Source: Macrostomum lignano
Taxonomy: Eukaryota
Assembly (NCBI GenBank): GCA_002269645.1
Contig: NIVC01001112.1
Location: forward strand, 124,001 to 188,000
Reading direction: 5' to 3'
Length of the DNA: 64,000 nucleotides
Positions within the stretch are counted from its first letter, which is position 1. The number at the start of each line of letters is the position of its first letter. The position numbers and the translations under genes are program-made. The notes beneath the pieces were generated by a model. The model was given only the letters and a program-made list of their open reading frames with translations. It was not told where the DNA came from and searched no databases. This document shows, piece after piece, positions 50,201 through 56,200 of this stretch.

Positions 50201-53200
50201 GTAGCCAAACTGAAGCAGGTTGATGACCAACAACAACAATGCGAAGAGTGTTGCAGATTTCACTTTCTGGTACACCAGCATGTTATTGACATCGCTGCTG
50301 TTATTGATACTCATTTGTGAGATCATGAACTTTCTTTGTTAATAAAATCGTCTCTAACGAAGGTCAAATGCAGATTTCACCAAGTTAGCAACATCATTCT
50401 AAATTCATCTCTAAAAAGTTTTTTGTCTGTGGGCAAAAATGCTGTTATGCTATAGCATAATTTTTGATTTGATTAGCAAATTCGCAAATGCTTAAGAGTG
50501 AAAACATTTTTACAATGATTATTTCTGATTGCGACTACCAACCAACCCTGCCGCTGCCTGAGCATTCGCTCTTGGTGTGCACGCTGCTTGTGTAAAACAG
50601 ATGCTTATGCTACTTGGAATATGAGGCACAGACAGACAGACAGACAGACAGACAGACAGACAGACAGACCGACAGACAGACAGACAGACAGACAGACAGA
50701 CAGACAGACAGACAGACAGACAGACAGACCGACAGACAGACAGACAGACAGACAGACAGACAGACAGACAGACAGACAGACTGACAGACAGACAGACAGA
50801 CAGACAGACAGACAGACAGACAGACAAAGCAGACAGACAGACAGACAGACAGACAGACAGACAGACAGACAGACAGACAGACAGACAGACAGACAGACAG
50901 ACAGACAGACAGACAGACAGACAGACAGACTGACAGACAGACAGACCGACAGACAGACAGACACTAAGACAGAGTGACAGACAGACAGCCAGACCGACAG
51001 ACAGACAGACAGACAGACAGACAGACAGACAGACAGACATTCCCTCCCGCCTCCCCACCGCAGTGCAAACCCGGGTGTACATGCAAGAAGACCGCAACCG
51101 TCTATTCCTTACCTTCAACAACTCGCTCAGTCTAATAGAGATGAAAGCGGAAGTGAAAGATCGGGTTCTGTCGCACGATCGCTCTGTAACATCCGTGATA
51201 TTCAGCTGGCAGCTCAACCAGCTGCTTACCGCCTGTCAAGGTTCCAACCTGTCCTTCTGGCTGATCGACACGGGCCAACGCCTTCGGCAGACCCCAAATG
51301 CACACGGAGATGCCGAGATCACCACTTTGGCAAACGACCCGGCTGAATCCAGGTTCTACTCAGGTGGCACCGATGGAATTGTTAGGGTGCGTACTCGGTT
51401 TTTGGGGTGATTGATGGACAGAAAGGATGTCAGACTGCTAGACACGATGTCAGATTGATGGACACGATGTCAGATTGATAAACAAGATTTCAGATTGATG
51501 GACACGATGTCAGATTGATAAACGTGATGTCAGATTGATAAACGTAATGTCAGATTGATATGATGTTAGATTGACAGACATGATGTCAGATTGATAGACG
51601 TGATGTCAGATTGCTAGACACGATGTCAGATTGATAAACACGATGTCAGATTGATAAACATGATGTCAGATTGATAAACGTGATGTCAGATTAATAGACA
51701 TAATGTTAGATTGATAGACATGATGTCAGCTTGATAGACATGATTTCGGATTGATAGACACAATGTCAGATTGCTAGACACGATGTCAGATTGATAAACA
51801 CGATGTCAGATTTATAAACACGATGTCAGATTGATGAACACGATGTCAAATTGATAAATACGATGTCAGATTGATCGACACGATGTCAGATAGATGGACA
51901 TGATGTCAGATTAATAAACGTGATGTCAGATTGATAAACGTGATGTCAGATTTATAAACTTGATGTCAGATTGCTAGACACGATGTCAGATTGATAAACA
52001 CGATGTCAGATTGATCGACACGATGTCAGATGGATGGAAATGATGTCAGATTGCTAGACACGATGTCAGATTGATAAACACGATGTCAGATTGATAGACA
52101 TGATGTTAGATTGATAGACATGATGTTAGATTGATAGACATGATGTCAGATTGATAGACATGATGTCAGATTGATAGACATGATGTCAGCTTGATAGAAG
52201 TCACACAAATCGAATGTTTAAAATCAACGTTTTGAAGATTTATTTATTTATTTTTATACATATTTATGCAAAATGCAACTATTGAATATTGTCAATGCCT
52301 GAAAAATATTAATTCGGTTACTAGACATTCTATATAAGGTAATTAATCAATAATATGGTCGTGTGACAGACAATTATTGTCTTGAAAACACAGCTGCTGA
52401 CAGCTGTTCAAAGCACTTGGCAACAAACTCTTGCCAGATATTCTTCTTCATCTGCTCTCTCTTTGCCGTTTCGCTAATTGTACTTTTATTCGGCAAAGAG
52501 CGAAGCTTCTGCGACGCGCGAAGCGTCGACACGTTCCACACCTTGCGGTAGCGCTTCCGACCGCAGCGCCAGAACTCGACGCAGGGACACCGGCCCAGGC
52601 TGTAGCGCATCACCTGGTCTGGCTGACTGCAGAACCGCACCGACTTTGTCGGGCGCAGCTCTGAGCTTGCCTCACTGTTGCTGACTGCCTGGCATCTGTC
52701 GGGTGCGGTGATGTAGGGATGTTGTTTGTGTGTCTGTCTCTGTCTGTCTGTCTGTCTGTCTGTCTTTGTCTGTCTGTCTGCCTGTCTGTCTGTCTCTGTC
52801 TGTCTGTCTGTCTCTGTCTGTCTGTCTGTCTGTCTGTCTGTCTGTCTGTCTGTCTGTCTGTCTGTCTGTCTGTCTGTCTGTCTGTCTGTCTGTCTGTCTG
52901 TCTGTCTGTCTGTCTGTCTGTCTGTCTGTCTGTCTGTCTGTCTGTCTGTCTGTCTGTCTGTCTGTCTGTCTGTCTGTCTGTCTGTCTGTCTCTGTCTGTC
53001 TGTCTGTCTGTATGCCTGTCTGTCTGTCTCTGTCTGTCTGTCTGTCTCTGTCTGTCTGTCTGTCTGTCTGTCTGTCTGTCTGTCTGTCTGTCTGTCTGTC
53101 TGTCTGTCTGTCTGTCTGTCTGTCTGTCTGTCTGTCTGTCGGTCTGTCTGTCTGTCTGTCTGTCTGTCTGTCTGTCTGTCTGTCTGTCTGTCTGTCTGTC

Positions 53201-56200
53201 TGTCTGTCTGTCTGTCTGTCTGTCTGTCTGTCTGTCTGTCTGTCTGTCTGTCTGTCTGTCTCTGTCTGTCTGTCTGTCTGTCTGTCTGTCTGTCTGTCTG
53301 TCTGTCTGTCTGTCTGTCTGTCTGTCTGTCTGTCTGTCTGTCTGTCTGTCTGTCTGTCTGTCTGTCTGTCTGTCTGTCTGCCTATCTGTCTGTCTGTCTG
53401 TCTCTTTGTCTGTCTGTGTGTGTGTGTGTGTGTGTGTGTGTGTGTTTCTGTCTGTCTGTCTGTCTCTGTCTGTCTGTCTGTCTGTCTGTCTGTCTGTCTA
53501 TCTATCTGTCTGCCTATCTGTCTGTCTGTCTGTCTCTCTGTCTGTCTGTGTGTGTGTGTGTGTGTTTCTGTCTGTCTGTCTCTGTCTGTCTGTCTGTCTG
53601 TCTGTCTGTCTATCTGTCTGCCTATCTGTCTGTCTGTCTGTCTCTCTGTCTGTCTGTGTGTGTGTGTGTGTGTGTGTCTGTCTCTCTGTCTGTCTTTCTG
53701 TCTGTCTGTCTGTCTGTCTGTCTGTCTGTCTGTCTGTCTGTCTGTCTGCCTATCTGTCTGTCTGTATAAATGTTCCCAAAGTCCAACTCACGTCGCGCTG
53801 AACTTCTCCCGCGAGCTGTGCCGCTCATTCTGTTGAGAGTGCCGAATAACTTTAAGCAGCACCAGCACGAGAGCGGTGACGGCAAGCCGAGCTAGACCGG
53901 CTTCCAGGCAGTGCAGTGCTGCTGGCATGCTTGCAACCGCAGTTTTGTTTGAAGAGTGGCAATGGATGGCCTGCCTAACTGCAATAGCTGTATTTATATA
54001 GGGCTGAACGAGGCCGCTATTAATAGGGCATGGGCTCGGCAGGGCACTGCAGTCTTCGCTGGTTTCTATTCTTCTGTTTCAAAACCCACTTCACTCAGTG
54101 GCAGAACTGTCTTAGTTGGAAATTCGTCACTGCTTGTTAAGGACCTGAGTCACCTGCTGCTTAGCCGTTTTTCTTTATAGCAAAGCAGAGCATTATTAAC
54201 CTAAAATAGACGAAACTGGTCTCCAGGGTCGTTTCAAGCTCGAGCGTCCCGCCTCCAGTGTGCCTGCTTGAAACTGCTAAAAATAGACCGCACAGTTGGG
54301 AATGAGAGCGTTCACTCAATTCTAATCTCAGAGCTTCAATGTGGCACCACAAAGTGACCTTTTAAAAATTCAAATTTCACCTTCAGATTTGGGACTGGAA
54401 CGGGCACATGTACCACGAGCTCGACTGTAATCGTCCAGGTGTGTCCGCTGAGATCTCGCAGATTTTGGTGCTGAAGCATAGCGTCATTGCTTGCGGCTTC
54501 TCCAAGGACATCACCGTGTTTAGGACGAACAGTTTTAGGGATATCAGGTGAGTAGCGGTGTCTGACGCTGCACTGACGCATCAAGGATTGGTGTCTCACT
54601 GCAACATCAAGGATTGGTGTCTCACTGAAACATCAAGGATTGATGTCTCACTGCAACATCAAGGATTGGTGTCTCACTGAAACATCAAGGATTCGTGTCT
54701 CACTGCAACATCAAGGATTGGTGTCTCACTGAAACATCAAGGATTGGTGTCTCACTGCAACATCAAGGATTGGTGTCTCACTGCAACATCAAGGATTGGT
54801 GTCTCACTGACGCATCAAGGATTGGTGTCTCACTGCAACATCAAGGATTGGTGTCTCACTGACGCATCAAGGATTGGTGTCTCACTGCAACATCAAGGAT
54901 TGGTGTCTCACTGAAACATCAAGGATTCGTGTCTCACTGAAACATCAAGGATTGGTGTCTCACTGCAACATCAAGGATTGGTGTCTCACTGACGCATCAA
55001 GGATTGGTGTTTCACTGCAACATCAAGGATTGGTGTCTCACTGACGCATCAAGGATTCGTGTCTCACTGCAACATCAAGGATTGATGTCTCACTGCAACA
55101 TCAAGGATTGATGTCTCACTGCAACATCAAGGATTGGTGTCTCACTGCAACATCAAGGATTGGTGTCTCACTGAAACATCAAGGATTCGTGTCTCACTGC
55201 AACATCAAGGATTCGTGTCTCACTGAAACATCAAGGATTGGTGTCTCACTGAAACATCAAGGATTCGTGTCTCACTGAAACATCAAGGATTGGTGTCTCA
55301 CTGCAACATCAAGGATTGGTGTCTCACTGAAACATCAAGGATTGGTGTCTCACTGACGCATCAAGGATTGGTGTCTCACTGAAACATCAAGGATTGGTGT
55401 CTCACTGAAACATCAAGGATTGGTGTCTCACTGCAACATCAAGGATTGGTGTCTCACTGAAACATCAAGGATTGGTGTCTCACTGCAACATCAAGGATTG
55501 GTGTCTCACTGACGCATCAAGGATTGGTGTCTCACTGACGCATCAAGGATTGGTGTCTCACTGACGCATCAAGGATTGGTGTCTCACTGACGCATCAAGG
55601 ATTGGTGTCTCACTAAAGCTCCAAGAATCGGTCAACATTCGATCGATCACTGAACCGCGATCTCACCGCTTTTCAGAATTAAACCCGGCGAATGGCGAGA
55701 GCTCGACCAGCATAGAGACGACATCCTAGCGGCTGCGTACTGCGCTCCGCACTACCTCATCACGGCCAGCTACGACGGAATGATCGCCGTATGGAACATC
55801 AGCTCGGAGGTGTGCACCAGGCAGATGCGCCAGCGCTGTTCGACCATGCGTCGGCAAGCGTCAAGTTCGGCTGGCAGCGGCGAGAGACGCCGGTCGGCGC
55901 GTAGCGACCGACAACAGCAGCAGGTTGGTTTTAAGGCGAATCTCAAGAAAGATTGTCTCCACGGAGTGAATCCGAGAGTATCTATTGGAGACCCTTATAT
56001 TTTATAATTCTTATAGAACCTTATTATATACCAGAGTGAATCTAGGAAGTGACAAACGGAGTAAATCTAGAGAGTGAAAACCGGAGTGAATGCAGAGTGA
56101 AAACTGGAGTGAATCTATAGAGTGACATCCGGAGTGAATCTAGAGAGTTCCAGCCGGAGTGAATATAGAGAGTGACAACCGGAGTGAATCCATAGTGAAA

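What the first reader, a model, noticed from the sequence alone, without database searches (positions are those of the whole stretch)
52239..54000. Hidden antisense gene A inside WDR49 intron 13, with PP1-docking and neuropeptide-like motifs
Seen: a complete gene anatomy on the strand opposite WDR49 (TATA box, ATG, 137-nt exon, GTGAGT donor, (GACA)n-filled intron, phase-matched acceptor, stop, AATAAA about 130 nt later). The ORF track shows only fragments. The 152-aa product has one hydrophobic stretch (about aa 12-28) followed by basic residues. Two readings compete. (a) K63-S-V-R-F67 is a textbook RVxF PP1-docking motif, followed 6 residues later by a hydrophobic pair (VM) and Arg residues, like the RVxF-phi-phi-R composite of spinophilin/GADD34-type regulators; this would make it a membrane-anchored PP1 targeting subunit. 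(b) C84-V-E-F-W-R-C90-G-R-K-R has the same C-x2-F-x2-C-GRKR spacing as insect CCAP precursors (PFCNAFTGC-GRKR) and an FWR core like urotensin/somatostatin FWK; this would make it an amidated cyclic peptide precursor. I recognise no family. Both readings are inference.
Basis: partly seen in the sequence, partly recalled or inferred. Interest (0 to 1): 0.78.

Follow-up and report, generated by a model that had tools for sequence, protein, structure and literature searches.

The report
Annotated orphan gene nested in intron
The two-exon antisense gene is real, but it is already in GenBank as a Macrostomum lignano hypothetical protein with no relatives outside that species, and neither the PP1-docking reading nor the neuropeptide reading is supported beyond short motif matches.

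Summary
The window is flatworm DNA: Macrostomum lignano, assembly Mlig_3_7, contig NIVC01001112.1.

The 152-aa product is 100% identical to GenBank PAA72114.1 (BOX15_Mlig016731g1, hypothetical protein). That annotation was built only from RNA-seq transcripts, so the gene is not hidden and its splice junction has transcript support. A second genomic copy (g2) has an identical coding sequence and a 260-nt intron.

ORF length, first-AUG position, codon-position GC and codon usage all look coding. An exhaustive search of 1.84 billion representative proteins found only M. lignano copies, and Pfam and PDB gave nothing, so this is an orphan gene.

- **Host gene:** it is WDR49-like.
- **PP1 reading:** KSVRF matches RVxF, but 5-25% of shuffled sequences also match.
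- **Neuropeptide reading:** the CCAP-like C-x2-F-x2-C-GRKR is rare by chance. However, it has no dibasic site on its N-terminal side and no good signal-peptidase site.
- **Topology:** charge distribution favours an uncleaved anchor with the basic tail in the cytosol.

Function remains unknown. Interest is low.

The parts
53991..54000 (-). TATATAAATA element (candidate TATA box)
   Evidence: Read directly. TATAAA starts at 53998. The 5' end of the transcript-based model for the second genomic copy (g2) maps to window 53967-53969, which is 29-31 nt downstream. The g1 model starts further upstream at 54024, so use of the TATA box is an inference.
53929..54024 (-). Annotated 5' leader. It is translated in frame in the 'partial' GenBank CDS as INSGLVQ...TAVAS.
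   Evidence: P0001 carries 32 extra N-terminal residues that equal this stretch. L001 position 10001 corresponds to window 54024. The leader contains no ATG, and the Kozak context is GCAAGCATGC with A at -3.
53792..53928 (-). Exon 1 coding part (137 nt, aa 1-45 plus 2 nt). It encodes the hydrophobic segment at aa 10-28.
   Evidence: It is identical in the second genomic copy, 137 of 137 nt.
52696..53791 (-). Single GT-AG intron, 1096 nt. Donor GTGAGT, acceptor CCCGACAG.
   Evidence: The junction is fixed by the 100% identity of PAA72114.1 across FSAT|CQAV. The same junction is used in copy g2, whose intron is only 260 nt.
52723..53765 (.). (GACA)n / (TGTC)n microsatellite filling the intron, about 267 units with CA-rich interruptions
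   Evidence: TRF. Its length differs about four-fold between the two genomic copies.
52374..52695 (-). Exon 2 coding part (aa 46-152 plus TAA). It contains KSVRF (aa 63-67) and [11 protein letters not shown] (aa 84-94).
   Evidence: It is 322 of 322 nt identical in copy g2.
52239..52373 (-). 3' UTR with three overlapping AATAAA at 52252-52239
   Evidence: The 20-bp minisatellite begins at 52198, just beyond it.
51134..51389 (+). Host gene (WDR49-like) exon upstream of the intron that holds the nested gene
   Evidence: Stop-free WD40-like frame. The host gene call spans the whole locus on the opposite strand and has WD40 beta-propeller Pfam hits. Named hit: WDR49-like.
54380..54542 (+). Host gene (WDR49-like) exon downstream of the intron that holds the nested gene

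Best explanation
This is a genuine, independently transcribed, two-exon protein-coding gene of Macrostomum lignano. It is already deposited as BOX15_Mlig016731g1 / PAA72114.1 (hypothetical protein). It lies antisense inside an intron of the WDR49-like gene, on a roughly 1.8-kb island of unique sequence between two minisatellites.

It is taxonomically restricted: no relative is detectable outside M. lignano.

Proposed mechanism (inferred, not shown):
1. A TATA-type promoter about 30 nt upstream of the start site drives a roughly 0.65-kb mRNA.
2. The first AUG opens a 152-aa ORF.
3. The hydrophobic segment at aa 10-28 targets the nascent chain to the ER.
4. The segment has no small-residue (-3,-1) cleavage site after it, and its positive charges sit on the C-terminal side. 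It therefore most likely stays as an uncleaved signal anchor with the short N-terminus outside.
5. The very basic C-terminal 125 residues (net charge about +16) then face the cytosol. They comprise a disordered linker, a small Cys-rich hairpin and a terminal helix.

The biochemical role of that tail is not established. The RVxF-like KSVRF is one candidate handle, not a demonstrated one.
For: **Shown**
- The protein is 100% identical over 152 of 152 aa to PAA72114.1. A second copy, PAA52740.1, lies in the paralogous host intron.
- The GenBank annotation of Mlig_3_7 was built only from RNA-seq-derived transcripts (StringTie/TACO plus a de novo assembly). ORFs were called by TransDecoder, and non-coding and repeat-overlapping transcripts were removed (PMC5730564).
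- The donor, the acceptor and the whole CDS are identical in both copies, although intron length differs (1096 vs 260 nt). The junction is therefore not a microsatellite mapping artefact.
- An ORF of 152 aa or more occurs in only 15 of 5000 shuffles.
- The start codon is the first AUG of the transcript, with A at -3.
- GC at codon positions 1/2/3 is 0.56/0.47/0.67, against 0.56/0.41/0.70 in the host exons.
- The codon-usage score is +0.082 bits per codon. That is the best of the six frames and lies within the leave-one-out range of real host exons. Only 1 of 3000 random non-exonic stretches exceeds it.
- Only M. lignano proteins were found among 5.8 billion clusters and 1.84 billion representatives. 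Pfam and PDB gave nothing.

**Inferred**
- Anchor and topology rest on the Kyte-Doolittle 19-residue maximum of 2.20 at aa 10-28, and on flank charges of 0/+1 on the N side against +3 on the C side.
- AlphaFold2 on the single sequence gives helix 3-52, disorder at 50-68, a hairpin at 84-99 and helix 118-150.
Against: - No orthologue or diverged paralogue DNA was available, so purifying selection on the ORF is untested.
- The two Mlig_3_7 copies are 99.4-100% identical in the flanks too, so the identical CDS says nothing about selection.
- The codon model was trained on only 569 codons. In single segments, some antisense frames score as well as the sense frame once their stops are ignored. The last 40 codons are AT-rich and score lower, at -0.215.
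- TransDecoder selection across roughly 70,000 transcripts will pass some chance ORFs.
- No expression or proteomic record for Mlig016731 was found.
- UniProt names two ML2-assembly models of this gene 'Secreted protein'. This probably reflects an automatic signal-peptide prediction and, if so, runs against the uncleaved-anchor reading.
- The AlphaFold2 model is weak (mean pLDDT 62).
Confidence: 0.6

Rival explanations
1. It is an intronic antisense long non-coding RNA. The transcript and its splice are real, but the 152-codon ORF is a by-product of GC-rich, stop-poor sequence that TransDecoder picked up, and no functional protein is made.
For: - There are no homologues anywhere and no evidence of constraint.
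- Stop-free stretches of 68-77 codons also exist on the opposite strand of exon 2.
- In single segments, antisense frames score similarly on codon usage, and the last 40 codons have no GC3 bias.
- The annotation pipeline keeps any transcript with a predicted ORF.
Against: - The ORF length is reached in only 0.3% of shuffles.
- The whole-ORF codon score is in the exon range and beats 99.97% of non-exonic stretches.
- The ORF starts at the first AUG, in a good context, and continues in frame across the splice.
Confidence: 0.2
2. It is a secreted peptide precursor. The N-terminus is a cleaved signal peptide, and prohormone convertases cut at G91-R-K-R94. This would yield a C-terminally amidated, disulfide-bridged peptide ending in ...CVEFWRC-NH2, analogous to CCAP.
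For: - C-x2-F-x2-C-G-R-K-R has the same spacing and the same GRKR extension as Drosophila CCAP, PFCNAFTGC + GRKR.
- The exact pattern occurs in 1e-5 of shuffles. Any C-x4-8-C-G-[KR][KR] pattern occurs in 7e-4.
- Precursor size (152 aa), basic charge and a roughly 30-residue hydrophobic N-terminus resemble the crab CCAP precursor, which has 143 aa, a 32-aa signal peptide and pI 9.4.
- After removal of Cys7, six cysteines remain, an even number.
- UniProt names two ML2 models 'Secreted protein'.
Against: - Real CCAP is preceded directly by a dibasic KR. Here the preceding residues are G80-R81.
- The conserved P-F, N and G of CCAP are absent.
- No small residues lie at -3/-1 after the hydrophobic core (KVIRHSQQ), and positive charges follow it, which favours an uncleaved anchor.
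- The low-confidence AlphaFold2 model places G91-R92 at the turn of a hairpin rather than in an exposed linker.
- No precursor-level homology to any neuropeptide family was found.
- The pattern was chosen after the sequence had been seen.
Confidence: 0.1
3. It is a membrane-anchored PP1 targeting subunit. The cytosolic disordered linker docks protein phosphatase 1 through K63-S-V-R-F67, followed by V74-M75.
For: - KSVRF fits both the loose and the strict RVxF consensus.
- It lies in the stretch AlphaFold2 leaves unstructured (aa 50-68, pLDDT 40-42).
- A hydrophobic pair follows six residues later (read from the sequence).
- Charge distribution predicts a cytosolic tail, which this reading needs.
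- From general knowledge: PP1 regulators are often small, disordered and lineage-specific.
Against: - The motif arises by chance in 25% (loose) or 4.9% (strict) of shuffles of this very sequence.
- No Arg lies at the usual distance after the hydrophobic pair. That spacing is recalled from memory and was not tested.
- There is no conservation test and no binding data.
- One ML2-derived model is frame-shifted across this segment, but that assembly is error-prone, so it carries no weight.
Confidence: 0.08

Closest known systems
GenBank PAA72114.1 / PAA52740.1 (BOX15_Mlig016731g1 / g2, hypothetical protein, Macrostomum lignano) and the UniProt ML2 models A0A1I8HGB5, A0A1I8FHJ9, A0A1I8ISR9
   Same: It is the same gene. 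PAA72114.1 is encoded by this very locus with the same splice junction, and PAA52740.1 is a second genomic copy with an identical CDS.
   Different: The GenBank CDS is marked 'partial' and is translated from the 5' end of the transcript, adding 32 residues of leader. The UniProt models come from the error-prone ML2 assembly and carry frameshifts or truncations.
Nested antisense genes within introns of larger host genes in animal genomes (a general category, from general knowledge)
   Same: It is a complete small transcription unit with its own promoter-like element, splice sites and poly(A) signals. It lies wholly inside a host intron on the opposite strand.
   Different: Nothing unusual for the category. 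The local peculiarity is that the unit sits between a 20-bp and a 26-bp minisatellite, and its own intron is a length-variable microsatellite.
CCAP (crustacean cardioactive peptide) precursors
   Same: A nonapeptide-length segment with C-x2-F-x2-C, followed by G-R-K-R. The overall precursor size and basic charge are also similar.
   Different: There is no dibasic site on the N-terminal side, and the P-F, N and G residues are not conserved. A third Cys sits inside the segment. Signal-peptide cleavage is doubtful, and there is no precursor homology.
RVxF-type PP1-interacting proteins (spinophilin, PNUTS, GADD34/PPP1R15 class)
   Same: A KSVRF match in a probably disordered segment, followed by a hydrophobic pair.
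   Different: There is no sequence homology to any of these proteins. The motif is common by chance, and binding, conservation and cytosolic exposure are all untested.

Membership tests
Annotated M. lignano gene Mlig016731 (identity, not just similarity) | The same locus and the same exon junction give the deposited protein | tested here: met
   100% identity and 100% coverage to PAA72114.1. The locus L001 returned for that protein is the reverse complement of the window around 54024-52374.
Taxonomically restricted (orphan) protein-coding gene | No detectable homologue outside the lineage | tested here: met
   Only M. lignano proteins were found in the word-indexed search of 5.8 billion clusters and in exhaustive phmmer against 1.84 billion representatives. 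Pfam and PDB gave nothing significant. Caveat: other Macrostomum species may be missing from these collections.
Taxonomically restricted (orphan) protein-coding gene | Transcribed and spliced | tested here: met
   This is indirect. The GenBank model exists, and that annotation was derived solely from RNA-seq transcript assemblies. Raw reads were not inspected here.
Taxonomically restricted (orphan) protein-coding gene | Coding signature or translation | tested here: inconclusive
   ORF length (p about 0.003), first-AUG position, GC3 bias and codon score all favour coding. The training set is small, there are no translation data, and no dN/dS could be computed.
Nested intronic antisense gene | Lies wholly within one intron of a host gene, on the opposite strand | tested here: met
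   The host gene call spans the whole locus on the other strand. The flanking host exons are at 51134-51389 and 54380-54542. No host-like coding frame lies between them.
CCAP-type neuropeptide precursor | Cys-x2-Phe-x2-Cys loop followed by Gly and a basic cleavage site | tested here: met
   C84-V-E-F-W-R-C90-G-R-K-R94, compared with PFCNAFTGC + GRKR in Drosophila.
CCAP-type neuropeptide precursor | A dibasic cleavage site directly before the peptide | tested here: not met
   The crab precursor has KR49-50 immediately before the peptide. Here residues 80-81 are G-R, a single basic residue.
CCAP-type neuropeptide precursor | Cleavable N-terminal signal peptide | tested here: inconclusive
   A hydrophobic core is present at aa 15-25. 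It is followed by K-V-I-R-H-S, with no small residues at -3/-1, and the net positive charge lies on the C-terminal side. UniProt's 'Secreted protein' name points the other way. SignalP was not available.
CCAP-type neuropeptide precursor | Homology of the precursor, or conservation of the P-F-C-N-x-F-x-G-C residues | tested here: not met
   No hit outside M. lignano. Only the C, F and C residues of the nonapeptide are shared.
RVxF-type PP1-interacting protein | Match to the [RK]-x(0,1)-[VI]-{P}-[FW] consensus | tested here: met
   KSVRF at aa 63-67. A match is expected by chance in 25% (loose) or 4.9% (strict) of shuffles.
RVxF-type PP1-interacting protein | Motif lies in an exposed, disordered, cytosolic or nuclear segment | tested here: inconclusive
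   AlphaFold2 on the single sequence leaves aa 50-68 unstructured (pLDDT 40-42). Cytosolic exposure rests only on a positive-inside argument.
RVxF-type PP1-interacting protein | Physical binding to the PP1 catalytic subunit, and motif conservation in orthologues | not testable with these tools
   No orthologues were retrievable, and complex prediction and wet-lab assays are not available here.

The most novel reading that the evidence does not exclude
The [11 protein letters not shown] block is a real processing site. On this reading the gene is a fast-evolving precursor for a cyclic, C-terminally amidated peptide, a CCAP-like ligand in a free-living flatworm that homology-based neuropeptide surveys have missed.
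Probability: 0.05. Interest if true: 0.6.

Novelty: already known. Interest (0 to 1): 0.2.

Why it matters
As it stands, this matters little. It confirms that a tool-less reader can recover a correct spliced gene model from raw sequence, but the gene is already in the public annotation as one of many M. lignano hypothetical proteins.

It would matter more if comparison across Macrostomum species showed the ORF under purifying selection. It could then serve as a compact example of a young, nested, lineage-specific gene in a model flatworm that has transgenesis and RNAi.

If the Cys-loop/GRKR block proved to be processed, it would add a peptide hormone candidate to a phylum whose CCAP-type signalling is poorly charted.

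Tried and rejected
- **Selection test between the two genomic copies.** The CDS is 459 of 459 nt identical, but the flanks are also 99.4-100% identical, so the comparison carries no information.
- **UniProt ML2 models as diverged paralogues.** They carry frameshifts and truncations. 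The ML2 assembly has only 31.9% error-free bases by REAPR, so their amino-acid differences were not used. Their DNA is not on record.
- **Expression or phenotype data for Mlig016731.** Nothing was found in any main text or in the supplements held for PMC5816591, PMC12896417 and PMC7336406. No supplements are held for PMC8629364, PMC10786194 or PMC12801592.
- **Family assignment.** The best Pfam hit has E 0.4 and the best PDB hit E 0.7, both noise.
- **Structure.** AlphaFold2 on the single sequence gives mean pLDDT 62 and pTM 0.26. No fold search was run, because matches to such a model would be meaningless.
- **Extra copies or transposable-element origin.** tblastn against the window and L002 finds only the gene itself. 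Both copies sit in the same intron of duplicated host genes, so this is not a mobile element.
- **Literature on a flatworm CCAP ligand.** None was found.
- **Bacterial-type promoter and terminator scan.** Not run, because it does not apply to an animal gene.

Full report
**Where the window comes from.** It matched GenBank PAA72114.1, 'hypothetical protein BOX15_Mlig016731g1, partial [Macrostomum lignano]', at 100% identity and 100% coverage. The locus returned for that protein is contig NIVC01001112.1 of assembly GCA_002269645.1 (Mlig_3_7). It is the reverse complement of the window, and locus position 10001 corresponds to window 54024. The window is therefore DNA from a free-living flatworm.

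**The observation.**
- TATATAAATA at 54000-53991.
- ATG at 53928, in the context GCAAGCATGC.
- A 137-nt first coding exon ending at 53792.
- Donor ACG|GTGAGT.
- A 1096-nt intron, of which 52723-53765 is a (GACA)n array of about 267 units.
- Acceptor CCCGACAG|A, with exon 2 starting at 52695 in the matching phase.
- TAA at 52376-52374.
- Three overlapping AATAAA at 52252-52239, 122-130 nt past the stop.

The residue numbers quoted for KSVRF (63-67), [11 protein letters not shown] (84-94) and the hydrophobic stretch (Kyte-Doolittle maximum at aa 10-28) are correct. The mechanical ORF list shows only fragments of 46 and 88 aa.

**Is it a real gene?** The GenBank protein is identical across the junction residues FSAT|CQAV, so the deposited model uses the same splice.

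According to the genome paper (PMC5730564), the annotation submitted to GenBank was derived entirely from transcripts:
- RNA-seq was mapped with STAR and assembled with StringTie/TACO, together with a de novo assembly.
- Transcript boundaries were trimmed with trans-splicing and poly(A) evidence.
- ORFs were called by TransDecoder.

The existence of the model is therefore indirect evidence of transcription and splicing. I did not see reads.

A second copy, Mlig016731g2 (PAA52740.1), lies on contig NIVC01003191.1, inside the paralogous copy of the same host gene. Its donor, acceptor and all 459 coding nucleotides are identical, but its intron is only 260 nt. The junction lies in unique sequence and does not depend on the length of the microsatellite. 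This argues against a mapping artefact.

The g2 model's 5' end corresponds to window 53967-53969, 29-31 nt downstream of TATAAA. This fits a TATA-directed start. The g1 model begins 57 nt further upstream, at 54024, so this point remains an inference.

**Coding potential.**
- The start codon is the first AUG in the annotated leader and has A at -3.
- An ORF of 152 codons or more appears in 15 of 5000 shuffles of the spliced transcript that preserve local dinucleotide composition.
- GC content at codon positions 1/2/3 is 0.56/0.47/0.67. Across 569 codons of host-gene exons taken from the same window it is 0.56/0.41/0.70.
- A codon-usage log-odds model trained on those host exons gives +0.082 bits per codon in the proposed frame. 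That is the best of the six frames. It lies inside the leave-one-out range of the host exons (-0.095 to +0.32) and is exceeded by 1 of 3000 random non-exonic 456-nt stretches.

Caveats:
- The training set is small.
- In individual segments, some antisense frames score as well as the sense frame once their stop codons are ignored.
- The last 40 codons are AT-rich and score -0.215, although that is still the best of their six frames and far above the 3' UTR.

I rate the gene as probably coding, but not proven.

**Selection could not be tested.** The two Mlig_3_7 copies are 99.4-100% identical from 500 nt upstream to at least 1 kb downstream of the gene. The identical CDS therefore carries no information. 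The UniProt models from the older ML2 assembly show amino-acid changes, frameshifts and truncations. That assembly has only 31.9% error-free bases by REAPR, and its DNA is not on record here.

**Relatives.** An exhaustive phmmer search of 1.84 billion representative proteins returned only two M. lignano entries. The best Pfam hit had E 0.4 and the best PDB hit E 0.7. tblastn finds no further copy in the window. Within the limits of what these collections hold, the gene is an orphan.

**The host gene.** On the + strand there are WD40-type coding exons at 51134-51389 and 54380-54542, on either side of the nested gene. The public gene call spans the whole locus on that strand and encodes 1109 aa with many WD40 beta-propeller Pfam hits. 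Translating the two flanking exons and searching them gave 'WD repeat-containing protein 49-like' from a snake as the best named hit, at 47% identity and E 3e-26. 'WDR49-like' is supported. The intron number was not checked.

**What the protein looks like.**
- It has a net charge of about +16 (27 K+R against 11 D+E).
- It has seven cysteines, at 7, 47, 68, 82, 84, 90 and 140.
- It has one hydrophobic segment.

After the hydrophobic core ([11 protein letters not shown], aa 15-25) comes K-V-I-R-H-S-Q-Q. There are no small uncharged residues at -3/-1 for signal peptidase. The net flank charge is 0 to +1 on the N side and +3 on the C side. By the (-3,-1) rule and the positive-inside / charge-difference rule (both established knowledge), this favours an uncleaved anchor, with the short N-terminus translocated and the basic tail in the cytosol. 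Against this, UniProt names two ML2 models 'Secreted protein'. I take that to reflect an automatic signal-peptide prediction, which is my own reading of the name.

AlphaFold2 without an alignment gives a weak model, with mean pLDDT 62:
- a long N-terminal helix (aa 3-52);
- an unstructured stretch at aa 50-68;
- a hairpin at aa 84-99 whose turn is G91-R92;
- a helix at aa 118-150.

**The PP1 reading.** KSVRF fits the loose RVxF consensus and the stricter five-position version recalled from the literature. Shuffles of this protein produce a match in 25% and 4.9% of cases respectively. The motif lies in the predicted disordered stretch, and V74-M75 follow six residues later. No Arg lies at the spacing I recall for the composite motif. 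Nothing tests binding or conservation. The reading is topologically compatible with my preferred anchor model, but it is otherwise just a motif hit.

**The neuropeptide reading.** Drosophila CCAP is PFCNAFTGC-amide, and its unprocessed form carries a GRKR extension. C-x2-F-x2-C-G-[KR][KR] occurs in only 1e-5 of shuffles, and any amidated Cys loop of 4-8 residues in 7e-4. The pattern was chosen after the sequence had been seen.

Three things count against membership:
- Real CCAP is directly preceded by a dibasic KR in a characterised precursor. Here the preceding residues are G-R.
- The P-F, N and G residues are not shared.
- Cleavage of the N-terminal segment is doubtful.

I found no report of a flatworm CCAP ligand. 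I keep this as the most novel reading not excluded, at about 5-10%.

**Verdict.** It is an ordinary nested, lineage-restricted small gene. Its product most likely enters the membrane through an N-terminal anchor, and its function is unknown. Both functional stories rest on short motifs with no comparative or experimental support. Interest is low.

Noticed in passing
window 51426-52198 and 54571-55614: The nested gene sits on a unique island bounded by two minisatellites. One has a 20-bp unit (GATGTCAGATTGATAGACAT, 38.8 copies, 86% matches). The other has a 26-bp unit (40.2 copies, 93% matches). The 26-bp array produces long repetitive ORFs on the + strand.
   Followed up: partly
window 52723-53765 vs L002 about 10215-10410: The (GACA)n array in the nested gene's intron differs about four-fold in length between the two genomic copies (intron 1096 vs 260 nt). 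The exons and splice sites are identical.
   Followed up: yes
window 50628-51039: A second tetranucleotide array, (ACAG)n with 103 copies, lies just upstream of the host exon at 51134. On the + strand it is the reverse complement of the TGTC array in the nested gene's intron.
   Followed up: no
window 52485-52490 (minus strand): An AATAAA lies inside the coding sequence, at codons N114-K115. Two of the UniProt ML2-assembly models of this gene end or go out of frame exactly here (…SLPNK, …NKKYN). That is consistent with a homopolymer-length error, or possibly an alternative short 3' end.
   Followed up: partly
window 24001-30000 and 32001-34000: There are blocks of several kb with extreme AT skew (+0.67 to +0.77, then -0.57) at about 50% GC. 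These indicate long strand-asymmetric low-complexity arrays inside or near the host gene.
   Followed up: no
window about 12950-14000, 18100-19000, 22175-23560, 49600-50160: Several further minisatellite arrays give long, repetitive, stop-free frames on the + strand, for example [18 protein letters not shown]... and [23 protein letters not shown].... These are likely to confuse ORF-based reading of this window.
   Followed up: no
window 42388-42631 (+): One host-gene exon has an EF-hand-like stretch ([25 protein letters not shown]) ahead of the WD40 repeats. It was seen only by eye in the frame listing and was not scanned against Pfam.
   Followed up: no
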